A DNA stretch of 43,292 bases, counting the filler, from Polymyxa betae A26-41 (taxonomy: Eukaryota > Protista > Endomyxa: Phytomyxea): assembly GCA_003693705.1 (NCBI GenBank). It is 2 parts of 2 records of this genome, joined end to end, with 100 filler letters (N's around TTAATTAATTAA, not from the genome) between each part and the next. Parts side by side here need not be neighbours in the genome. Positions count along the whole stretch, not along the records: positions 21,016 to 43,292 come from RBZT01000314.1; 1 more part is not named here. One strand, 5' to 3'. Position numbers and translations under genes: made by a program. The notes under the pieces were generated by a model that saw only the letters and a program-made list of their open reading frames with translations, was not told where the DNA came from and searched no databases. Each line of letters opens with the position of its first letter. Positions within the stretch are counted from its first letter, which is position 1. Positions 21,016-43,292 of this stretch are shown here, piece after piece.

Positions 21016-21681
21016 CAGGACCTGATACGACGAGTCCGAATCCATGATTGGATTACGGAAAATTCCGAGATCCTCAACCCGCTAACGACTATGATCCAAG
21101 AATGCGAGTCCCCAGCGACTGGTATCAAGGAAACTCCGCAACTACACCAGAGTGTCAAATCCTGACTAAACGAATTCGTCTAGAGACCGATGCCGTACTG
21201 GCCCATTTGGGAGACCGTCGCCAAGTAGCGCTATCTCCAAAAGACTGATCCAATTACGTTACAATCCGGATATCAACCTCGGGCTCTGCGTTATGGACAT
21301 CCGGAGTTACGAAGACATGGTCTGGATCCACCTCCGAGACACCGTACACTATGAGATTATCATTATGGATATCGGCTATTACGGCAGTCCTGACTGGATG
21401 GTCGTACTGGCCCAAATCAAGAAGGCGAACGCAGCCCTGTTAAAATGGCGATCTCTTCCGGACTTCTTTCTGAACAAGCCAAGAAATTCCTTTCGATCGT
21501 CAACACGGACCTGCCGAAGTTTCACATCCTCCCGAAACTGCATAAGAAGACTAAGCCGATACCGTCACGGCCTATTATCGGCGCAGTTATTTGGATCACT
21601 ACCAACTGGTCCATCTATCTTACTACTGTGCTGGAAAAGATCGAATGCGAACTCACGTTCAAGAATAGCTTCAACGTCTAG
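21016..21681 (+). mobile_element. Penelope-like retroelement reverse transcriptase fragment (frameshifted, truncated)
   Basis: DINLGLCVMDIRSYEDMVWIHLRDTVHY (DKNLG..vmd...Y....hL.D...Y) and LPKFHILPKLHKKTKPIPSRPIIG (P.fy.LPKiHK...p.RPIvs) are PLE RT N-terminal motifs. Confidence 0.8.
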
Positions 21682-23852: not shown

Positions 23853-23911
23853 GATAATAATCAGGCGCCCTCCTTGATGTGATTTAATAGATTATATAGG
23901 GCACGAGATCG

Positions 23912-24830
23912 TCAAGTCTTGGTTGGCTTCGCAACAATTCTCGCGGCGAAATTGACAGCTTGGGAATCGGGCCGTGTACTGTTCGCGATATAAGCCACAC
24001 TCCCAACAACCTCCAGGTAATGGAAGTCGCAATCGTCCGTGCTGTCGCTGTCGGCTGCTGGATGTTCTTTTAAAGAAGGAGTCTTGACGGGATTCGCGTT
24101 CTGCATTCGGTATCGTTCCAAAACTCGAGTTATGTATGAGCCGTGCGTCACGAAAACGGCTCCGTCGCGGTTTTTGCTAATCTGTCAGCCTAGGATGTGT
24201 TGGCTTTTTCCCAATATCTTCATGCGGAAACGTTCAGAGAGGCCTTTCTCAATGTCGTGCATCAGGTCTAAGCTTTGCGAAGCAAATGTGATGTCTTCAG
24301 CGTAGATGGCGAGGACGATTGGCGTGCGGCCGCTTTGACGAAAAGGCAGCAATCGGCTGGCGATTTGCTTAATTCAGGTCAGTTAACAATGCCGTGATGT
24401 GATTGTACCATGCTAAGCCCGCTTGTTTCAGACCGTAGACTGCCTTATTGTGGCGACAAACAAGTGGCTCTCCCTGGCTGTCAGCTGCCTCAAATACTTT
24501 GGGCTGTGAAACGAAGAGCCCGACGTCGATCGTATCGACATCCATATGTCTCACTTGCCAATCTTCTGCAAACAGGCTAATCAAAGTCCTTATCGTCGTC
24601 AGGCTGGCCACTGGCGAGAATGTTTCGTTATAATCAACATCGTGACGCTATGAGAAACCTTGCGCTACTAATCGAACCTTCTATCGGTCACCAGTCCCGT
24701 CGGTCTTGGTCTTCGCCTTGAGCACTCATTTGGTCTTAATCGCTTTTCGTCCTGCCGGCAGTCGACACATCGTCCATGTCTCGTTTCGTATGAGTGAACC
24801 ATATTCCGAAATCTCCGATTTTTTTGAGGA
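23912..24830 (-). mobile_element. Ty1/copia reverse transcriptase pseudogene
   Basis: EYGSLIRNETWTMCRLPAGRKAIKTK*V..KVRLVAQGFS..VDYNETFSPVA; HMDVDT; KAVYGLKQAGLAWY; IYAEDI (degenerate YVDD); YITRVLERY..NPVKTP; YLEVVGSVAYIANSTRPD. Confidence 0.92.
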
Positions 24831-29249: not shown

Positions 29250-30908
29250 CATTCGAAGAACCAAAGCCACTTCAGAATTGCGGCAACCCATGGCAAAACA
29301 TGCCACTGTTGGTTTGTGATTGAATGTGCTTGCTCATCAGATAAATGATGCCAGCAGGTCGAGTTCTGCCCACCAACCTGATTTTGAGCACTCACGCCTG
29401 GAGCACCATGAGCTGAAGCAATCATCCAGTTAATGAAATTGGTAAAAGAAGCATCAGCATCGGCTCCTTGTGCCACTGGAGATTGGGGCATTCCAGCGCG
29501 GCATGAATTGCTGCACGATTAGTTACTTGCGCCACAATCGCAGGATCGTCTTGTGTCAACATTGTGAAATCGTATCAGAAGTTAGTAGATTGGCAGTTTC
29601 CTTTATACTGCAGGTAATATTGCTTGATAATTTGAACGCTCCATAATTCGGGATCGTTCAGGAATTGCCGAAGGGCTTCCAAACGTTATATCTTTTGTCT
29701 TGGACAGGGTAAATGAATAGCTCGGAGACGTCGACCGAGTTCAACATGTGATAGCTCTTCCAAACGCACGTTAGACATCTCTGCATGGTAAATGACTTAA
29801 GGAGACAGCCACAATCGCAGGATCGTATTGTGTCAACCCTTTGAGTAACATTGCTTGATAATTTGAACGCTCCATCTTCGGGATCGTTCAGGAATTGCCG
29901 AAGGGCTTCCAAACATCATATCAAAAAAAACATCATACCTTTTGTCTTGGACAGGGTAAATGAAAAATAGCTCAGAGGCGTCGACCGAGTTCGGAATGTG
30001 ATAGCTCTTCCAAAGGCACGTTAGACATCTCTGCACGATTTGGTACTGATGATTACAGCCTACGAGAACAGCAGCGACGAGCTCATACTTTGAGACTGCA
30101 TGGTCGCCATCTTGTAAATACTCCATGATTACTCGCTTTTCAAAGATGTAAAGTGTTATCTTTTGGCCAGGTCTACGCATAGTCGACCAGAGCTTTGCTT
30201 TCATCGTGGCAGCCGTCAAATTAGTAACTTTTGCTAAAGCTTTGTTGAGCTTTGCCCACATAACACTAGAGAATGTATAAATTCTGAATTGTGCCCATAT
30301 TGATTCTTCCATGGTAGCTAACAGAACAGCTGCAAGCTGTTCTTGTAGCTTCTTGCGATCCGTCAGCGATTGCGTTGTTACCCCTTCTTCTCTGATATCA
30401 TCTTCCAGGTGATTATATACGCGAAACATTTACCTAGATTTAACTTTGGACGTCCATGTCGTAAAATTGGATTCTCTTTTAGTTTTGGTTGAATAAAAGG
30501 TATGATATTTGAAGGATCAATATTTGGTAGTGCTGAGCCCATCACCAGTTGAAGATTGTTACTTCTTAAGATAAATACACTATATAACAACACTAAAACG
30601 AAATGAGCTTTTTTCTTGATTCCACAAACATTATAGGGGGTATCAAACAGGCGCTTTCCGTAGCTTTTAACGTCTGCTTTTAAAGGGTCTTAATTAAGAA
30701 GCGCTTTAAAAATTTTAAAGCATCTCCCGAGGTGCTTTTGAGATTTAGAAGCGCTTTTAAACCGATGCCACGGTCAATTTTAAAAGCGCTTTTAAAATTC
30801 TCCGGAACTCCAACTTTGATACCCCCTATTCAATAAGCCAACTATCACTGGCTGCAGAGTAAAGATATCTTCAGACACGCAGCCTTCAGTCAGTTTTCCA
30901 ATTCTAAA
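29250..30908 (-). mobile_element. Ty1/copia 5' part: LTR 30550-30908, PBS 30533-30546, gag (UBN2-like) ~29833-30500 with internal ~230-bp tandem duplication
   Basis: LTR ends ..ATCTTCA-act-GGTGATGGGCTCAG. ORF has AAVLLATMEESIWAQF..SSVMWAKL..KAKLW..PGQKITLYI..ELVAAVLVGC..YQIV (gag pattern). 29610-29790 is duplicated at 29850-30040. Confidence 0.8.
30636..30826. mobile_element. MITE, 191 bp, TIR GGGGGTATCAAA, inserted into a copia LTR
   Basis: ta|GGGGGTATCAAA ... TTTGATACCCCC|ta with internal AAGCGCTTTTAAA repeats. Absent from the sister LTR at ~28230. Confidence 0.9.
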
Positions 30909-31582: not shown

Positions 31583-32700
31583 GCTCCAGTATTAGGCCCA
31601 AAAATCCCTCACCTTTAGGGCACAGATTGCCCTCTTACCAACGATGTCGCCCTGCGCGACCATCTTGCTGTCAGCAACGACGCGTATTTGAAGCAATGAT
31701 GACGCCTCCAATCAAGACGCTGTCGCAAACACAATGATGCCGATGCAATCGATGCCAGCAAAAAAATTTTCGTTTGAAATTTGGCAATATCTTTTTTTGT
31801 TGAGCGACATATTAAGTGTTTTGGATCTGACGGAAAAGGGAAAATTTCGTGTCGTTGTTGCTGGTTCTAATCCAGTCGAAAGACTTGTCCCTGTTCAAGA
31901 GAATACAAAACTTCCATTATCTTATTGAGAGTGTGCTCCCATTGCTGTCAGAGGACTGTCTTTTATTGGGCGTATACTGCTCGAAGAAAAATAGACTGGT
32001 GTTGAAGTTGATTTAAATTGTTCCATCGAACCTGGATAGCACAGGTTTATTAAATCAATGTTAACCTCTGAACATATGGGAAACGTGGAAGGACATGGAA
32101 TGAAAGAGCACGGGAAGAGATGATGGGGAGGGAATGGAGATCGGAGGAAAAGGAATAGAACAGACTGGATCAGTCCCGGAACAGATCATGGAGATGGTAT
32201 AGAAAAAGAGTATGGATGGAGCAATCTAAGCAAGTTTATTACAATAATATATATTTTTACTGGACAAGTGCTACAGAATCATGGTTGCCAATAGAAGCGA
32301 TACCATTGTTTACGATGGAAAAAATTATCGCTGACTATAGGACAATGTCACAGAAACACAATACAACAGGATACCTAGCTGGCCGTCCACAAAACTGTTT
32401 TGCAAACAGATTTGCTGTATCGGACCGTGTTCAAGGACGTCGCCAACTCCCAACGTACATTCCAACTGAACTGTCGCATATCGATATAAACTATGAAACT
32501 AGGTATTCGATTTGCGAATCGGTTTAATCAGCCATGAATGATACTGCATAATTACGAAGTTCCCATGACTTAAGTTGAATATAGGTATGCAAAAATCAGG
32601 TAACCGATTATAGACGAAGCATGCTTGTAGTGAACATGGTGGTACTCACAATAGTATTGGATGTGTATTAGTATGTATTACATCCAGTGCAATAAGGTTC

Positions 32701-33865
32701 TCAAAGAAAAAGGAGAGTAAACATGGACATCAAAGCGATGACGAAGCTGGGAGCGGAAATCGACAATCCTGATGACGTCGGTGCTGGAGTCGGCGCCGTA
32801 CCGGTCGGAGCTGGCGTTGGTGCCACTGCTGGAGTGGGAGCTGGAGTTGGAGCAGGAGTTGGGGCTGGTGTCGGTGCTGGGGTAGGAGCTACCAGGACCT
32901 GGGTCCAGTACTCGAGATCACAGCAGGCCACTTTACTTCCAGCAGCTTCGTGAATAACGATCGATTTCGACACATTCATGTTCGAAAGACGAGGAGAGTT
33001 GGGCATCAGGTCGTAAACCGTATAGACGGGTGGTGAAGTGATCGTCGTCGACAAGTTAAACCAGAGCTCATTGGTTTGAATGGCGCCGCTGATGGAAGTA
33101 TTCGCCTTGACGTGACCGCCAGCTCCCGCAGAGCAGTTAGCATTGTGGACATGTGCATAGAAAGGTGTTCCGGGATTGTAGGTCTTGTTGTTGTAGTAGA
33201 TGGCAGCAACCAGGTGACCAGTTGTTGTGGTCGCCAATTGTTGAATATAGCTCCAGTCTTTTCGAATGACTGTGTAATTCGCGTTGAGAGAAATCCATTC
33301 GTGCAAGCATTTCCAGCGGACGAGAAGGTTGCTGGCAGTTGAAGGAGCTGCAGTCGTAGGGGCGCTTGAGGCTGTAGCCTTCGAGGTAGACATTTTACCG
33401 GTAGTAGTCTTTTTGGTTGTTTGGGCTTTCACAGTTGTAGGCTTCTTCGTTGTGGCCTTCTTAACAGTGGTAGGCTTTTTGGTTGTAGCTTTCTTAGTAG
33501 TAAGCTTCTTAGTGGTAGCCTTCTTTGTAGTGGGTTCCTTAGTAGTAGCCTTCTTTGTAGTGGGCTTCTTTGTCGTAGCCTTCTTTGTAGTGGGCTTCTT
33601 TGTCGTAGCCTTCTTTGTAGTGGGCTTCTTTGTCGTAGCCTTCTTTGTAGTGGGCTTCTTTGTCGTAACCATCTTTGTCGTTGGTTTTTTCGTGGTTGCT
33701 GCCTTAGTCGTCGCTTTCTTCGTGGTCGCCTTCATTGTGGTTGCAGCATCGGTTTGATAGGCGATCGCAATGATTGCTATCAAAGCTGCATAACAATCAG
33801 TCCTGTAAGTGTGGACAACATCAGCCAAGCTCACCAATCAGCATTATCAACTTGGTCCACTTCAT
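32701..33865 (-). CDS. Secreted, probably GPI-anchored mucin-like protein with TTKK repeats and a Cu-only-type SOD-like domain
   Basis: ATG 33865 MKWTKLIMLI|ALIAIIAIAYQTDA (49-nt intron 33786-33834); ~20 TTKK[A/P]-type units; AHVH..C..GGH..NELW..SIVIHE..SKVACC; (APTP)n stalk; SSG plus hydrophobic C-terminus PSFVIALMSMFTLLFL*. Confidence 0.85.
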
Positions 33866-34464
33866 CGTGCTTGTCGACAATTGATTATGTCAGCAACCTT
33901 CAATCGACAAAATGAGCAAGCAATGGGATCATGTGCCGGGAATGGGAACATGGACGTGCTGCTCCACACAGATGAGTAAAGGCGTTTGCAGTCACTGTGT
34001 TCTTATCAACCATTCCCAGAAATTTCTGTGACGTCGACCTCCAGACCCTCATTTCCATCTACGTTGACGAGTTTTCGCTTAAAACCCTTGGTTATGCTTG
34101 TCGGCGAGCTGACAAAAAGCATGTTAACATCAATCCTATCTGAATGGTAAACGATAATAAAGAGCTGTGTATTGTTAACGACAGTAACATTGTACAAAAC
34201 CATTAGAGTGATGGCCAGCGAAATAACAGCAAACAGACGTAAGCTGTCAAGACTTGCTTACAGAAAGGAACTGCCAGAGACAGGTTCGCTTTGATGGAGG
34301 CGAAAGAAATCTGGACCCTATCACAAATGTGCGTAAGCTCGGTCTGCTAAGTTAAAAGCGATACGGTTGGAGGCATCCCGGATCCACCTTTGTTTCTAAT
34401 CAATATCGTGCTCTACTGCTGCTGCTGTCGTTCATCTCTGCTCTGTTCGAAATTAGCGATAATA

Positions 34465-35223
34465 ATGGCGGGATTCGGCGAGGTTAGATACTTGTTTCGA
34501 TGCCTCACTCGAAAATTCATACACAATAAGTAGCTGGTTCTTGTTTTGGGTGATATGCATATTCCAAGCAGGATTGACAAACTTCCTTCTCAATTCAAGA
34601 GCCTTCTAGTAAAAAAAATTTTTCGATGATTGGCCTTTTTAGATTCATTTTTTTAGGTTCCGGGAAAGATGCAATACATCCTCTGCACCGGAAATTTGTG
34701 TTCTAAGCAGGCTTTGGATCACCTTAGAACGATTGCATCTAATGTCCATGTCGTTAAAGGCGATTACGATCTAGAAGGCGACTTTCCTGAAAATGACATC
34801 ATCCGAATTGGTGATTTCAAGATTGGACTCATGTACATCGCTATCGACTGGAAAGACCTGATGCTCATTTGTTATTAGTCATGGTCATCAAGTCCTGCCA
34901 TATGGTGACGCTGATGCCCTATCAGAAATTCAATCAAAGCTTGATGTGGATATTCTCGTTTCTGGACATACACATAAGCAAGAGGTGTATCAATATAATG
35001 GCAAATACTTTGTCAATCCAGGATCTGCCACAGGAGCGTACTCGCCGGGCGAAAGGTCGAGCTCATTCCTAACAGTTTAATCAGCTCTTGACACCCTCTT
35101 AGTGATGTTATTCCAAGCTTCGTTTTGATGGCAATCAAGGATGACAGAGTGACAACTTATGTCTACGAACTTCGTGATGGTGAAGTGAAGGTCAGCAAAT
35201 CCGAACATACCAAGACTAAATAA
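34465..35223 (+). CDS. VPS29: Vacuolar protein sorting 29 (retromer subunit)
   Basis: MAGFGE|LVLVLGDMHIPSR..LPSQFKSLL|VPGKMQYILCTGNLC..VHVVKGDYD..FKIGL|HGHQVLPYGD..LDVDILVSGHTH..FVNPGSATGAYS|PSFVLM..TYVYEL..VKV, stop 35221-35223. Confidence 0.96.
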
Positions 35224-35308
35224 ACTGGAACCATCTCGAACATTTACCAATTGGTACATTTCCGGAATCTCTCCCGTTGCCATTAAGCATTTCGTAGTCT
35301 CTGTAAAA

Positions 35309-38244
35309 ATGAGGAAATTCTCCATTCTCCCGCCTACGATGCAGCCGCCAACGACATCGTTAAGCGAATTTGAGCTAACTGTAAAGTCGATGGATGATCC
35401 CGGCCAAGTAAACGAGGCCGAACAACCTTTCAAATATTCGTCGATTCAAGAAGCTGATCCATTCCTTTGGAGGGCAAAGAACCCTCGTCTGAACACAACC
35501 GCTGCGATATTAGTTGTCGTAACAATGTATAACGAAGGTTTGAATAGCGACTCTTTTCGTATGCTTTCCAGTACTTTGGAACAGGTGGCGACGAATTACT
35601 CTTGACGCTTCGAGCTATCGCGAAGAATGTCAAACAAATGACAAGGCGGCTGCGTCGACCGACTTTCTGGCAGTCCATCGCTGTTGTGATCGTCAGTGAT
35701 GGTCGATCTAAGGCCTCGTCATCAACATTGCAGGTTGCCAAGGAGCTGGGTATTTTGAACGCTGCTGTTATGGCCAAAGCAAAGCCTACCACGCAGGTAC
35801 ATTTGTTTGAAAGCATTGTGAAGATGGTCGACAATGAAGCTCGAGGAACACGATTCCCTCCCCTTCAAGTTTTATTCGCCATGAAAGAGCGGAATTCTGG
35901 AAAGCTGAATTCGCATTTGTGGTTCTTTGAGGGATTCGCTCACGTAATTCAGCCAAAATATACCTTCTTACTGTAAGCTCAGTTCCTTTCGCACATCCAG
36001 CTCTGCCTTTTATACCCTTTTTCTCGTGTTTGCATTATCTAATGTTAATGATTCAGATTATCTTCGCCATGCTACTTTGTAAACCGATTTGATTTTGCGA
36101 GATTTACATGATGATTTCTGAATTCCATAGCGATGTTGGGACAGTTCCTCGGGACCTTTCGTTTCTCGGATTCTATAATGAGCTGGAGAACAACGACAAC
36201 GCTGCTGGTGTATGTGGGCGGTTAACTACACGATCAAACCATCCAATCGAATGGCTTAATCCTGTCATTTCTGCTCAAAGGTCGTTCTGTTGCTGAAGTT
36301 ATCCCATTTATCTGATCTCATTTTAGGTTCGAATATCAAGTGAGCAGTTTGCTAGACCTATCATTCCAATCTATCTTGGGCTATCTGGCTGTATTGCCTG
36401 GTGCTTTCTCTGCATATCGCTATGAGGTCTACGCCCTTGCCACAATGCTATTGACGTTGACTTGTTCAAAGGCGCTCCGAGGCGAACCCTTGCGACAATA
36501 TTTCTCTCAGCTTGGAGTTGCAGATCGCGATCTAAACCCATTCGTCACCAATATGTGGGTTGCATCATTAATTTGCATTGCGTTCGATTCATGTTTCTCG
36601 CTCGACTAACCCTTTTTGAATCAGGCCACTGCAGCGTGCTGTTTGATCATTAGCCTATCAATGATAACTGCTGACTTCTCTATAGGACTTTAGCAGAAGA
36701 TCGTCTATTATGCTATGAGCTAATATCAAAGAAGGATTGCAGCTACACACTGTCGTATGTGAATACAGCAGTAGCAGAAACAGACGTGCCCAGCGATTTA
36801 GTGGCTCTTCTGAAACAGCGACGTCGTTGGCTGAATGGATCGCTATTTGCCCTTCTCTATGCATTAGCTCACTTCTTCACATTCTGGGGTCAATCTGGAC
36901 ACACGTATGCTATTGCTAAAATGGTCTCTTCTTGCCTGACGTCTTGTCAGTCTTTACAGGAAATTTTGTATATCATTCCTGTATTTCTTCTTCGCTATCT
37001 CAGTTACTATACAATGGCTCGCTATGGGTATGTTCTTCCTGGTTATTGTTCTAGTTAGTCGGGCACTGGGCGTCTTGCCAATCTTCTATGTCGCTTGTGG
37101 ATCAGCATTCCTTATTATCGTCATCGTACAGTTTGTTCTCAGCATTCAGAACAGACCCCAGGTATCAGCAATCATGCAACAATTTTAATTTAAGCAGGAT
37201 CCCAGATTTCGTGAATGTCATTAATGTTTTCAAACAACTCCCTAATCAGAATCTCAGGATCTGCGAATAGCCTACAACTTTACATCAGCAATATTAAGTG
37301 TTATTACGGTTGGACTATTGGTGCTGATTGTCCAGTTTGCTTTGGTCCAGTTCAGGAAGGGCGATATCCTCCTTATCCTCACAGTTAGTACCTAGAAGAA
37401 TCGCATTTATGGTGCTATAAATTCTCTGCAGTTCTTTATTGCTTGGGGAGTTTACTTGGCTGCTGGGTTGCTTCATGGGGCTTTTGTGGCGATTTGCCTA
37501 TCGTTGCTACCGTTCGTTGCTATGACCCCTGCATTTTTGATTGTGTAAGCAAAATCAGTGCTGGAAATTTTAATTTAGCTGTTTATTAGATTTCCCATTT
37601 TCGCTTTATCAAACACCCATGATGTCAGGTAATTCCCCTTTGTTCGTCGATGTTAAAAAAGACTGAAGAATGCCAGCTGGGGAACAAAGGATTTGAATAC
37701 AGTCGCTCAGCCATCGGATGAAGCTACGAAAGAGATTGTTCGTCGTCGCTTTCAAAGGTTTCGAACTCTTGTTGTGGGAGTAAGTAGACCTGCCTCGCTG
37801 CTTCACTTTCTGATATCCTCTACAGCTTTGGCTATTATCAAACATCATTCTCGTTATACTGGTGTTCTATTTCGACATAGCAGATGCATTCCTTCTGGTT
37901 ACAATTCTTTCTGTCCTTTGTAGGCCTATCTTTGTCACACCTTCACATTGATGACATGGCATAGTCTTGAATGGGGCACGATTTATTGGATCTGTTCTTT
38001 ACCTAACAGGAGGCAGTGCTAACTCCTCACTTTTTGTATGTCTAATGTCAACACAATGACCTGATTAAGACTTGAGCAACAGGTGAAATTCTTTGTGTCG
38101 CCGATTACTATTCGTGCCTATATGGCGTTGCTGAAGTTGCCATTTTCTCTCCTGGCGTCTTTTGCATATATGCTCATAATGCTGTTTACGTTTTTTCTGC
38201 CTGATGAACGGGTATATAAGCCTATTGAAAGAATGTCTGAATGA
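35309..38244 (+). CDS. CHS: Chitin synthase (GT2, division-1 / fungal class I-III and oomycete-like)
   Basis: [28 protein letters not shown]|[43 protein letters not shown], then multiple TM exons and NTHDVSWGTKG. 3' end approximate. Confidence 0.95.
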
Positions 38245-38442: not shown

Positions 38443-41400
38443 CTATTGGGGCTCAGCGTATTCATCGTGTTTCAGAAATCGGCGATACTTTCTCTTGTTT
38501 CGATGGATGGTAACTTCCATTATTGCTATCATTTGGATTCTCTTCGTAGACTTAACAGTCATCGTTGCATCTCTGGGGCGGAAGTCAATCTGGTTTAGAT
38601 GTGCAGCATCATGTACAAATGCCATTGCGGTCAGAAAATCAGGGATTCAAATTTTTCTTAATTGACGTTTTTACAGAAGCTAAACCTGGTACCGTTTCAG
38701 ATTCCAGCACTGGTTGCAGCATTATTCGTATTGAATATAGCCTGGGCTGGAGACGATATTATAAGGATGCTGGCAGTGAAGCAAGCTCCTATTCAATAGT
38801 TTTTTATTACATGGTAAATTATCGATAAAGGAAACGTCCGAGATTGCGCTCGTTGTCATATATGAAAGAAATCAATGCCTTATTAATGTCTCTCACGACG
38901 TCTTTCGTAGCACAGCCCTCCAGTGTTGAGAAATCAACATTGATGCCTTTGACAGTATCAGTTGCTTGCTTTGTTACGAGTTTTTGGACTCGCTGCTGCA
39001 CTAAAGATCTGGCTCTCAGTAGCAGATTTGGAAACCGATCATGACGAATTGGGGCACTCCAATCATCCAGCAAATACTCTGCCAGATCAGCTATTTTGTT
39101 CTGAATGAACCATAAGCCAATGATTTGTTTGAGGTGGATAATTTAACCTGGGCCATCTGCTGATCAATGTTGTTCATAAATGATATTGGAAGTCCAACAA
39201 ATTTCTCTAATTGCATGAGATCACGCCCAGAAATAGGTGACCCGCAGAAGGTAACTGAAATGACACAGTTCATGTGATCAACGGCAACTTTCACAAGACG
39301 TTGAGCTGTATCTGTTCGTAAATCTCGGACTGCTGTTTTGAACGGCATATAACTGCGAAACAGCACATTCGAATCACCTATCAAATAAGACTGACAGCTT
39401 CCATCGGATGTCATCAAATAACCTGGAATAACAAGGAGCTGTGTGCAGGGCTGACAGAATGTTAGTGAAGGCGCTTTATCTTGTAGAAGTAAAGGTATCG
39501 AAGGTATGGCAACCGGAATTAGTGATCTGGCTGCTAGTGCTCCTGCTTCACATGCGTTGACTCTTATTGTTATATCAGTAAACGACGATTTTTGAAACGA
39601 CTGTATACATACAAACTGAGATTGATGCTATTACCACCGTCCGTCTTCCGAAATTGTACTACCGACCCGGCAGCATAAACAAATCGGTCACTAGTCCGAA
39701 AGAATCGGTCGACAATTACGCCACGATCTATTGCGACTGGGTCGTGGGAAAGCGCTTTTCGCATGGTTGGAGAGATCTAGGTCGATTTAAAGACGAGCCA
39801 GACAAAATAAACAGCGACCGTACAACTTTATCGGCTGTGTTCATTAAGGCAAAACAAGGCATCGCATACGTATCATCACTAGCTACTTGTAGCCGTGGTG
39901 ATCCTCCCGATCCTTCAATTTGACGTCATACTCCAACATGAAAAAATTTCAGACCATACCTTTGACGTTCACTTGTTGCAGAAGGACAGTTGGTGACAGA
40001 TGGTACGAGACGACGTGATTGGGGATAACTTCAACTCCTAGTTCGCCCAAGATCTATGTTGACAAAGTCAATGCCACAAAACAATCTCATCCAAAGGGAG
40101 ACCTGATTGATCCGATTGACAACATCCATATCGCCCCTTGCCCATTCGTGCTCTTTCCCAGGATAGATCCAACATATTTTCTGAATTACCCAGTCAGATG
40201 ATTTCAGTAAAGCATGGCAAAACAGATACGCTCATATCGAAGTTTCTTTTTTCAAATTCAGCCAAAACAGCCAACGACTCCACAGAATCCCCATTAACAA
40301 CTATACTTTCGGATGCGATCGCATTGCCGTTCAAGAATCTGAAAGCCGCTGACCACGGATGGTGACCGGTTTTATGCCTAAAGAACCTTCAGTCAAAATT
40401 CCCTTTACGAATGACCTTCTTACACAGCACGAAATACACCCGGAACATGAGCGCCGTATCTATCTAACCAGTCGGCGGTCTCCAACCCGGTAGCAATTAC
40501 CAAATAGTCATAGGGAACTTCGTATGATTTCAACTCGGAAGATGTGCCGGTTGTCATCCGAATGGTCTTCTTTCCATAGTCAACGTAGGTGACTTCGCCA
40601 CATACGTATTGGTGTCGCAGAGGTGCATTGATCACCGAAGGCAGAGCCGATGTACTGATCTGTGTAATCTGAACCCGAAATAAATCCATTTCCTGGATAT
40701 TTGCATTCTGTCAGCATACATGAGTAAATATGACTCTTGGCAAGTGTCGGATCAGCTCAGCTAAGAAGCCTCCAGCAGCCGTTGAAGCACCAATCACGAC
40801 AATTCGAGAATTGACAGCCGCTCTGGTATATGCAAAACCGATTATACTTGGCGTCATCATTAGGAAGATTTCAGATGTCGAATGACGTGCTGGCGCTTCC
40901 AGTGCGAGATCAAGCAGATCCAAAACAGGATCGGACATAGCAGGGTAGATTGCAATAGCAATGTTTAAACGCAGCAAGGCTTCGGTGAGGATCTCTTTTC
41001 GCCAAGAGCGATATGGAGATGCGATGTTAAAACGTGTTATGATGCCAACGTTTTCACAAGACGTGAATGCATCGATGTTGAGTTTTGCGTCAAATACTAG
41101 AATATCATCAGCAGACAGCGAATGAGCACTAAATATTCCAACGCATTCATCATCCACCTTGAAAACGACACTATTCTGAACTGCAATATCTGTATTGCCT
41201 GAATATGTCACTCGTAAAAGAAACGAAAACTATTCCATACACGCTTACCGAAGTATTGCTGAATGCAACTTTGATCGTTACTGGAAGCTAACCGGACGGT
41301 AGGCGGAGGTTGCACTGTAGCACGATGGCAAATGTAGAGAACATGATCGCAAGCAACTTCAGCCCGTGCAGGGATGATCGCAAAGTCACGTAGCAATGCA

Positions 41401-42447
41401 ATCTAAAACCAGAGGAAATAAATCTCAAAAGTTAAGCCCTTAGATAAAGTTGTACTGGTTCGGCAGAGTGCGGTAAAGTCAGCAAAGCATATCGCCTTTC
41501 AGGATACAGCGAAAACATGGCATCCAGCAGCGACAGATTTGCTAGCGGTTCAATATCACGATCTAGACATGTAACCGTGATACATATTGCATTTGTTGCA
41601 GCCAGATCTGGAAATGTGGCATCAATGCTGAAGAAGTCTTGCAGCGCCTCTGCTTTGATATCGGTAGTGATGCACATCATGCCTGGACACTAATTAACTT
41701 TGGGCATTTTCGAAAATTTCGATCATACCTTTGGGCTGATTATCCTTCAATAACACAATGGCCGCGTTGCTCTCATTTTGAGCCTCAATGAGCTCAGCAA
41801 GAAAGAAGGGACCATGCGTTTCCTGTAGCACTTGGCTCTGTTCAGAAAAAATTGGCTCGAGGTCGTCAAAGTCCTCAACGCAGGCAATTCGGGCTGTAAG
41901 CGTTCCAATCAGCTCGAGCCTATCCAAAGTATAGATCTGAAAACGTTGAGGATTACAGATATTTGATCCACGAGCATTACGTCATCAATGTTGGCAGATG
42001 CATGTACTTGCTTGAAATGACTTAATTGAATTGGAGGAGCAGAAACTGGATGGGCATAGGCGATACGAGCAAGATGAGTAATTGATGCGAAAACATGACG
42101 ATAAAGACAATAAAGGTCACCCTCTGAACATGAGTAATGGAGGAGGCGCAGCCATGTCGTATCGTAATATTGATAAGGGTTGCCTACATTGTGCAACGTT
42201 TCATCATTTTCATTACAGAAGAGTTGGTCATTATCATACTGCTATCTGCATATTTCGGGCAGGGTCCGAATGCAGCAACGGCAACGATATCGCCGCCCAA
42301 TCGGGCGATAAGGAATAGGGTCGACCAGCGCTTTAGTTCGTGTAGTGATTGTATTTGGAATCGGTCAAGAACAGAGTCGAAGACATCGCTTAGGAACGAT
42401 TCGATATCGGCCAAATCGGTAGCGGTTATAACGCTGCTGATGTTCAT
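38443..42447 (-). CDS. CFAP61: Cilia- and flagella-associated protein 61 (radial spoke / calmodulin-spoke complex)
   Basis: EDFDDLEPIFSEQSQVLQETHGPFFLAELIEAQNESNAAIV; MFSLYPERRYALLTLPHS; HVLYICHRA; VNSRIVVIGASTAAGGFL; VPYDYLVIATGL; GVIVDRFFRTSD..VYAAG; WSAPIRHDRF. Ends approximate. Confidence 0.88.
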
Positions 42448-43058
42448 CGTCCTGTCTGATGGCAATCGATCCTAAATGCCTAGGGTATGTATCTATCTGC
42501 CAGTCATATAATTTGTTAAAGTTTCACTCGGTCTAAAATTGCTGCTAGTTTAGGTTCCTTTGATTACTAAAAGACATGTGATCTCAAATGGGTAAAGGTC
42601 CCTGTCAACAACTGTCCTGGCTTAATCAATCCCCAAATGTTCCAGAATCGTTTAATTTTGACTGTTGTTCGGTTTATTTATTCAAGTACATTCTAAGCAA
42701 GTTTTTATCTTGAAATGTCCTATGTGGCTGCCAATGGATCTCCTGATATTACCATTGTGACTCGGAGGCGATGTAAAACCGATCTTGATAGGCTTCTTAC
42801 GCTGCCGAGCAAGATGCTGTGCGACGACAATGTTGTTGTCGAGAATGCACGCCAGGTGACTTCGCAATTCCGCGTCATTCGATTCTGGCTCGATCTGGTG
42901 GTACCCGGGCCAGTACCTCTTTGTCGGTGACCCAACGAGATCGATCGACTCTGTGATACGATGTCCGCCATGATGGATCGAATTCCCTCACACGTGTACT
43001 TCCAGTTCGGATTGACATTAGAATCATTCTGTCATCGGCTGTTTGATTAGCGGTAGTC

Positions 43059-43292
43059 ATGAGGCTATCAATGAAGCTGATCATCTTCGCCTTGCTGGCA
43101 GGAGTAATTCTATTAGCATGTGTTGCCGATGCTCAATCGACGACGATGAGAGCTACCACAAAGAAGGCTACAACTACACACGTCGTGAAGGCAACAACCA
43201 AGAAACCTACCACCAAGAAGGCTACAACTACACACGTCGTGAAGGCGACCACCAAGAAACCTACCACCAAGAAGGCTACAACTACACACGTC
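43059..43292 (+). CDS. Secreted TTKK-repeat mucin-like protein, 5' part (runs off the window); paralog of 32701-33865
   Basis: MRLSMKLIIFALLAGVILLACVADA-QSTTMRATTKKATTTHVVKATTKKPTTKKATTTHVVK...; 54-bp (18-aa) repeat unit. Confidence 0.8.
   Translation, partial: MRLSMKLIIFALLAGVILLACVADAQSTTMRATTKKATTTHVVKATTKKPTTKKATTTHVVKATTKKPTTKKATTTHV

What the first reader, a model, noticed from the sequence alone, without database searches (positions are those of the whole stretch)
32701..33865. Surface-anchored Cu-only-type SOD with a long polycationic TTKK arm
Seen: signal peptide, ~110 aa of Thr/Lys repeats, a compact domain with H-V-H, C..GGH, SIVIH and xxAC, a Pro/Thr stalk and a GPI-like tail. 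Known: Cu/Zn SODs use H46/H48/H63/H120 for Cu, H71/H80/D83 for Zn, a C57-C146 disulfide, Arg143 and an electrostatic loop. Cu-only SODs (Candida SOD5 type) lack Zn ligands and the loop. Here all four Cu histidines and the Cys pair appear retained, Zn histidines are absent, only 8 residues separate the last His from the Cys (no electrostatic loop), and the Arg143 position is Lys (SKVAC). Inference: an extracellular enzyme against the host oxidative burst, whose Lys-rich arm could replace the missing loop by concentrating superoxide, or could tether the enzyme to anionic host wall polymers. I do not know of this architecture being described.
Basis: partly seen in the sequence, partly recalled or inferred. 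Interest (0 to 1): 0.8.

Follow-up and report, generated by a model that had tools for sequence, protein, structure and literature searches.

The report
Protist surface copper-only superoxide dismutase
A root-dwelling protist makes a cell-surface protein with a zinc-free superoxide dismutase domain, of a lineage shared with predatory bacteria and not previously reported in this group, plus a long positively charged arm that probably acts as a tether or coat rather than helping catalysis.

Summary
The gene is real, spliced and polyadenylated (minus strand, ATG 33865, 49-nt intron, 371 aa). It encodes a signal peptide, a 122-aa Thr/Lys arm (net +40), a 142-aa domain, a Pro/Thr stalk and a GPI-like tail. 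The domain has no direct Pfam or PDB hit. A profile of 140 homologous domains hits Candida SOD5 (E=2.8e-6), and a confident model (pLDDT 94.5) matches only SOD-fold structures at the top. Four Cu histidines, the disulfide pair and a loop VII as short as SOD5's are kept; Zn histidines are absent. It belongs to a distinct lineage with an N-E-x-W motif, found in Rhizaria, other eukaryote-like proteins, and bacteria (mainly Myxococcota and Bdellovibrionota, mostly as three tandem repeats). A 2026 review lists open-site Cu-only SODs only for fungi and oomycetes. The host is probably a plasmodiophorid such as Polymyxa betae (inferred). Lys at the Arg143 position is ordinary (69 Lys, 68 Arg in the family). 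The arm persists in close relatives that lost their Cu histidines, so it is unlikely to replace the electrostatic loop. Activity and copper binding are untested.

The parts
33835..33865 (-). Coding exon 1 (start codon, first 10 codons of the signal peptide)
33786..33834 (-). 49-nt GT..AG intron inside the signal peptide
   Evidence: spliced joint 33785/33835 in run X3
32701..33785 (-). Coding exon 2 to the stop codon; no further intron (RNA-derived contigs cover 32645-33574 without gaps)
33959..34010 (-). 52-nt intron in the 5' UTR; the transcript reaches at least 34306
33745..33865 (-). Signal peptide, aa 1-24 (split by the intron); basic start, hydrophobic core, small residues at -3/-1
   Evidence: sequence and hydropathy; no predictor run
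33379..33744 (-). Thr/Lys arm, aa 25-146: 41 Lys, 48 Thr, 1 Glu, net +40, 16 TTKK units
33331..33378 (-). Uncharged Ala/Ser/Thr linker, 16 aa
32905..33330 (-). Open-site Cu-only-type SOD domain, aa 163-304. Cu His at 33151-33153, 33145-33147, 33112-33114, 32950-32952; disulfide Cys at 33133-33135 and 32923-32925; conserved Glu 33067-33069; Lys at the Arg site 32932-32934
32776..32904 (-). Pro/Thr/Ala stalk, 43 aa, uncharged
32704..32775 (-). GPI-signal-like tail: small residues (S-S-G), short spacer, uncharged hydrophobic end
   Evidence: sequence and hydropathy; no predictor run
32643..32700 (-). 3' UTR ending at a poly(A) site near 32643
   Evidence: loose end in run X6
43071..43292 (+). Start of a second gene with a signal peptide and a TTKK-type arm, cut off by the edge of the piece; whether it carries the same domain is unknown

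Best explanation
A secreted, GPI-anchored surface protein of a flagellated, chitin-making root protist, probably a plasmodiophorid such as Polymyxa betae (inferred). Its domain is an open-site Cu-only superoxide dismutase of a lineage separate from fungal SOD5. It is held off the membrane by a Pro/Thr stalk, most likely picks up copper outside the cell as fungal Cu-only SODs do, and turns superoxide at the parasite surface (for example from the plant oxidative burst) into H2O2 and O2. The Thr/Lys arm is a separate module shared by a small family of surface proteins: a probably O-glycosylated, extended, positively charged brush that binds anionic surfaces (pectin, mucilage, the parasite's own wall) or forms a coat, whether or not the attached domain has copper. 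Shown: gene, splicing, polyadenylation, homology, predicted fold, residue conservation, arm retained in His-less relatives. Inferred: localisation, copper binding, catalysis, the arm's ligand, the organism.
For: Spliced, polyadenylated transcript. Family profile hits SOD5 chains best in the PDB, E=2.8e-6; 22 of 140 members hit Pfam Sod_Cu, best 3.7e-6. Model pLDDT 94.5, pTM 0.89; Foldseek top hit is SOD5 5cu9, prob 1.00 though E=0.011; the top 15 VIA rows are all SOD-fold, Z 7.2-10.1, rmsd about 3 A over 93-128 residues, then unrelated folds at 6.1. All four His are kept in 136 of 140 domains, including the query. Loop VII length equals SOD5's. Arm present in P0001 (126 aa, net +40; K/H/V/K at the His sites) and P0010 (H/N/H/D). 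Fungal Cu-only SODs are GPI-anchored or secreted and load Cu outside the cell (PMC13017621); Fusarium Sod5 contributes to plant pathogenicity (PMC7960929). Human SOD3 binds matrix polyanions through an ionic matrix-binding domain (PMC6959284). Neighbours CFAP61 and chitin synthase, GC 43.7%, root and rhizosphere RNA runs, nearest kin on a small scaffold of a beet assembly and in Leptophrys.
Against: No member of this lineage has a measured activity in anything I could read. Only one conserved acid (E88) stands where SOD5 has E110 and D113, and two weak alignments put it at either place. The loops around the site are shorter than in SOD5. Three of the four closest relatives have lost Cu ligands, so this clade tolerates loss of catalysis. 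Bacterial neighbours show no copper or redox context. No ligand evidence for the arm.
Confidence: 0.55

Rival explanations
1. The domain is a structural or adhesive coat module, or a copper sink, built on the SOD fold. It may bind Cu but dismutation is not its main job; the family is a set of surface coat or adhesion proteins.
For: Three of the four nearest relatives lost 2-3 Cu His but keep fold residues, Cys and architecture. The E110/D113 pair is incomplete. Six N-glycosylation sequons in 142 residues, one next to the disulfide Cys. CSRP repeats without Cu sites are known (PMC13017621).
Against: This copy and P0003 (50% identical) both keep all four His while about half the other positions changed. 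Across 135 more distant domains only one lacks a His, and Lys/Arg is kept at the catalytic cation site in 137 of 140.
Confidence: 0.25
2. One reading: the Lys-rich arm replaces the missing electrostatic loop by concentrating superoxide near the copper.
For: Net +40 next to a domain with a short loop VII; a 122-aa flexible arm could reach the site; both His-intact close members (query, P0003) have an arm.
Against: The arm is also on His-less relatives (P0001, P0010). Among about 240 fetched proteins only these close relatives have a Lys-rich stretch; the other family domains are net negative (median -5) and have the same short loop. Fungal Cu-only SODs need no loop for near diffusion-limited rates (PMC13017621).
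Confidence: 0.1
3. It is an active SOD, but its purpose is developmental: making H2O2 locally from the parasite's own superoxide to cross-link a cyst or spore wall, with the arm as a wall component.
For: A SOD makes H2O2 by definition; Lys/Thr-rich repeats suit cross-linking; the organism builds chitin walls.
Against: No stage-resolved expression data could be read; contigs give no levels. The chitin synthase next door may be coincidence.
Confidence: 0.1

Closest known systems
Fungal Cu-only SODs (Candida albicans SOD5, PDB 4N3T/5CU9; Fusarium oxysporum Sod5)
   Same: SOD barrel, four Cu His, disulfide, no Zn His, 8-residue loop VII, signal peptide and GPI-like tail.
   Different: About 15% identity; N-E-x-W motif instead of the E-x-G-D-L segment, so one acid rather than the E110/D113 pair; shorter loops between the second His and Cys and after the third His; a probable second disulfide; a 122-aa polycationic arm; not a fungus.
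[quoted passage not shown]
   Same: Open-site Cu-only domains, extracellular, some repeats without a Cu site; relatives of this domain also occur as 2-15 tandem repeats.
   Different: This protein has one domain; no CSRP came up in the searches; the tandem relatives found here are bacterial and protist-like.
Bacterial 'superoxide dismutase family protein' of the N-E-x-W type (Actinomycetota singles; Myxococcota and Bdellovibrionota triples), unstudied
   Same: True sequence homologues, 25-40% identity, same invariant residues.
   Different: No arm, stalk or GPI tail; exported or lipoprotein; below the Pfam Sod_Cu cut-off; no function measured.
Mycobacterium tuberculosis SodC and Deinococcus radiodurans DR_0644 (bacterial Cu-only SODs)
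   Same: Zn-free SOD fold (VIA Z 9.8 and 7.2).
   Different: MtSodC keeps the full loop VII (PMC13017621); DR_0644 has three His and is part of an S-layer complex (PMC9823218).
Mammalian extracellular SOD3
   Same: An extracellular SOD with an appendage that binds anionic matrix ionically (PMC6959284).
   Different: Cu/Zn enzyme with a full loop; short C-terminal binding domain; no GPI anchor; unrelated appendage.

Membership tests
Cu/Zn SOD superfamily (fold) | Greek-key beta barrel of SOD type | tested here: met
   Model pLDDT 94.5; top 15 VIA rows and all top Foldseek rows are SOD fold
Cu/Zn SOD superfamily (fold) | Sequence homology to Sod_Cu / solved SODs | tested here: met
   Query alone: no hit. 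Family profile: SOD5 E=2.8e-6; 22/140 members hit PF00080
Canonical bimetallic Cu/Zn SOD | Zn ligands H71, H80, D83 | tested here: not met
   No His between H73 and H127
Canonical bimetallic Cu/Zn SOD | Full electrostatic loop VII | tested here: not met
   8 residues from last His to Cys; 8-10 in most of the family
Fungal-type Cu-only SOD (SOD5) | Four Cu histidines in sequence | tested here: met
   H60, H62, H73, H127; first two and last align with SOD5
Fungal-type Cu-only SOD (SOD5) | The four His converge on one site | tested here: inconclusive
Fungal-type Cu-only SOD (SOD5) | Intramolecular disulfide | tested here: met
   C66 and C136 conserved in 139 and 138 of 140; the bond itself is inferred
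Fungal-type Cu-only SOD (SOD5) | No Zn site and abbreviated loop VII | tested here: met
Fungal-type Cu-only SOD (SOD5) | E110/D113 pair | tested here: not met
   One acid only (E88, 139/140); three residues on is hydrophobic or Pro; register ambiguous
Fungal-type Cu-only SOD (SOD5) | Extracellular, GPI-anchored or secreted | tested here: inconclusive
   Signal peptide and tail fit by eye and hydropathy; no SignalP or GPI predictor
Fungal-type Cu-only SOD (SOD5) | Cu binding and SOD activity | not testable with these tools
   Needs recombinant protein
CSRP | 4-12 tandem Cu-only domains on one chain | tested here: not met
   One domain in this protein and in the piece; tandem forms occur in relatives

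The most novel reading that the evidence does not exclude
An unrecognised third lineage of open-site Cu-only SODs (N-E-x-W type) spans bacteria and protists, has its own CSRP-like tandem forms in predatory Myxococcota and Bdellovibrionota, and in plasmodiophorid root parasites has become a family of GPI-anchored coat proteins: one active enzyme plus pseudo-enzymes, each with a polycationic arm that attaches the parasite to anionic root surfaces and places ROS defence at the contact site.
Probability: 0.3. Interest if true: 0.75.

Novelty: new variant of a known kind. Interest (0 to 1): 0.52.

Why it matters
A 2026 review states that open-site Cu-only SODs occur only in fungi and oomycetes and arose in opisthokonts (PMC13017621). 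A lineage with the same design in Rhizaria and bacteria, including tandem-repeat forms, would revise that history and supply a natural test of whether the E110/D113 pair is needed. Pfam misses the domain, so genome annotations miss it. For plasmodiophorids, vectors of crop viruses whose surface proteins and root attachment are poorly understood (PMC9944879), it names a concrete expressed surface antigen and a candidate attachment module for disease control work.

Tried and rejected
The primary SOD5 papers and the 2022 Polymyxa genome paper were not held. Rejected: histone H1-like HC2 and extensin hits on the arm (below cut-off, composition only); the TTG start of the 378-aa ORF (splicing shows the true start); three other intron choices; Lys at the Arg site as special; CHRD or fn3 folds (5-6 weak members against 22 for Sod_Cu, and the fold search); recent transfer from bacteria (the quick tree puts the clade among eukaryote-like domains, apart from bacterial ones, with no root). 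Contig depths were not used to rank expression. The large protein search was used once, after the word search and family scans were blank. All database searches used exon 2 by reference; the joined spliced model was not searched and was used only for local composition counts.

Full report
Gene. The finding lies on the minus strand. The long open frame 32701-33837 lacks its own start. An ATG at 33865 joins it through a 49-nt GT..AG intron. Contigs of run X3 skip exactly 33786-33834, and also a 52-nt intron in the 5' UTR; run X6 ends in poly(A) at 32643; contigs cover 32645-33574 with no gap or mismatch. These runs are not labelled RNA, but splicing and poly(A) show they are. The product is 371 aa: signal peptide (1-24), Thr/Lys arm (25-146; 41 Lys, 48 Thr, net +40), a 16-aa neutral linker, a 142-aa domain (163-304), a 43-aa Pro/Thr/Ala stalk and a GPI-like tail. 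Database searches used exon 2 by reference; the joined model was not searched.

Organism (inferred, not shown). Neighbours are a CFAP61 flagellar gene and a chitin synthase, introns are about 50 nt, GC is 43.7%, and root and rhizosphere metatranscriptomes hold part of the sequence. The closest protein (60%) is a partial gene on a 775-bp scaffold of a Beta vulgaris assembly, probably a contaminant; the nearest named eukaryote after that is the rhizarian Leptophrys vorax. Polymyxa betae has 45.1% GC, Spongospora subterranea 45.7%, Plasmodiophora brassicae 58.5% (PMC6328671). A plasmodiophorid, most likely P. betae, fits best. The sources of P0003, P0010 and P0011 are not named.

Domain identity. 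Alone the domain hits nothing in Pfam, NCBIfam, the PDB, the word search or the Atlas. An exhaustive phmmer search found 128 representatives, carrying 332 domain copies. In an alignment of 140 domains, H60, H62, C66, G71, H73, N87, E88, W90, V125, H127 and C136 are at least 90% conserved. The query scores 79.7 bits against a profile built without it and its four nearest relatives. The family profile finds Candida SOD5 first in the PDB (E=2.8e-6; only the two ends align) and then Cu/Zn SODs; 22 members hit Sod_Cu; a bacterial member's nearest Atlas clusters are Sod_Cu. With this alignment AlphaFold gives pLDDT 94.5. Foldseek ranks SOD5 first (E=0.011, probability 1.00). VIA ranks 15 SOD-fold chains first (Z 7.2-10.1, rmsd about 3 A) before unrelated sandwiches at 6.1. 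These Z values are moderate alone, but sequence and structure agree.

Active site. SOD5 uses H75, H77, H93, H153 and the pair E110/D113 (PMC13017621). The query has four matching His, no His between H73 and H127, and 8 residues from the last His to the Cys, as SOD5 has. The Arg143 position is Lys in 69 and Arg in 68 of 140 domains, so the Lys is unremarkable. Only one conserved acid, E88, is present; two weak alignments to canonical SODs put it at the H80/E110 or at the D83/D113 position. The pair is therefore not met, and the protein should not be filed as SOD5 proper, though it most likely works like one. The review notes that not all CSRP repeats keep the pair. C8 and C137 probably form a second disulfide (inference).

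The wider family. A DNA motif scan of GTDB genomes found 52 loci, mostly Myxococcota and Bdellovibrionota; 37 of 51 frames carry three tandem domains, and such proteins mostly start with signal or lipoprotein peptides. Single-domain forms occur in Actinomycetota and others, some named 'superoxide dismutase family protein'. Eukaryote-like relatives carry 2-15 repeats, several with transmembrane or GPI-like tails. No neighbour is conserved. A quick, unrooted tree of 86 rows and 131 columns groups the query with its four nearest relatives (SH-aLRT 99, with one long-branch row) inside a set of eukaryote-like domains separated from the bacterial ones (95); the careful search did not finish, no canonical SOD was included, the eukaryote labels are mostly my inference, and no donor or order of events follows. 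The 2026 review says open-site Cu-only SODs are found only in fungi and oomycetes. Another paper says homology searches found single-domain Cu-SODs in bacteria too (PMC12217663), and Deinococcus DR_0644 is an assayed Cu-only SOD (PMC9823218). Bacterial Cu-only SODs are thus not new as such; I found no description of this motif type, of bacterial tandem forms, or of any in Rhizaria, in eight searches of an open-access library.

The arm. Among all fetched proteins only P0001, P0003 and P0010 have Lys-rich stretches. P0001 has a 126-aa arm of net +40 but K/H/V/K at the four His sites; P0010 has an arm and H/N/H/D; P0003 has an arm and all four His; P0011 has no long arm and L/H/R/Y. In this small sample the arm does not follow the copper site. 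Relatives without any arm have the same short loop and net negative domains, and fungal enzymes are fast without the loop. That argues against electrostatic steering. A second gene with such an arm starts at 43071 and is cut by the edge, and runs X3 and X6 hold a further arm variant. The arm looks like a shared surface module. A tether to anionic polymers has a precedent in SOD3 (PMC6959284), and pectin affects zoospore attachment in oomycetes while the basis is unknown in Spongospora (PMC9944879). This is inference only.

Verdict. Best reading (0.55): a GPI-anchored Cu-only-type SOD of a distinct bacterial-protist lineage, with an independent polycationic tether or coat arm. Rivals: non-catalytic coat or copper sink (0.25), loop replacement (0.10), developmental H2O2 supply (0.10). 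New variant of a known kind; interest 0.52.

Noticed in passing
window 43071-43292 (+): Start of a second secreted protein with a TTKK-type arm built of a 54-bp unit (96% match), cut by the edge of the piece; likely a member of the same surface family.
   Followed up: partly
L002-L053 (GTDB loci), e.g. L018:4629-6296: Exported or lipoprotein chains of two to four tandem open-site SOD-like domains, mainly in Myxococcota and Bdellovibrionota: a bacterial parallel to animal CSRP, below the Pfam cut-off, with no conserved neighbour.
   Followed up: partly
L057:5001-12161: A 2386-aa protein (P0022) with about 15 repeats of the domain on an unassigned metagenome contig; in the quick tree its repeats fall among bacterial domains.
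   Followed up: no
L001:1-775: Gene BVRB_030240 of a Beta vulgaris assembly is 60% identical in protein and 66% in DNA over the domain, on a 775-bp scaffold; probably protist contamination annotated as a beet gene.
   Followed up: partly
P0011: A close relative without Cu ligands whose stalk is made of TTYAAS-type repeats, recalling oomycete cyst germination repeat proteins (from memory, not tested).
   Followed up: no
window 34465-35220 (+): A multi-intron gene that reads like Vps29 (recognised by eye), head to head with the SOD gene whose 5' UTR reaches at least 34306: a very short shared promoter region.
   Followed up: no
window 35189-37900 (+) and about 38800-42470 (-): Chitin synthase exons (PF01644, PF03142) and a CFAP61 flagellar gene (PF16092).
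   Followed up: partly
window 23900-24650, 29833-30429 (-), 21394-21678 (+): Decayed copia-type retrotransposon pieces (RVT_2, gag) and a further reverse-transcriptase-like fragment without a Pfam hit; the left half of the piece is mostly transposon remains.
   Followed up: no
window 32804-32890, runs X3, X6, X13: Several other transcripts in the same runs carry similar Pro/Thr stalk DNA, suggesting more stalked surface proteins.
   Followed up: no
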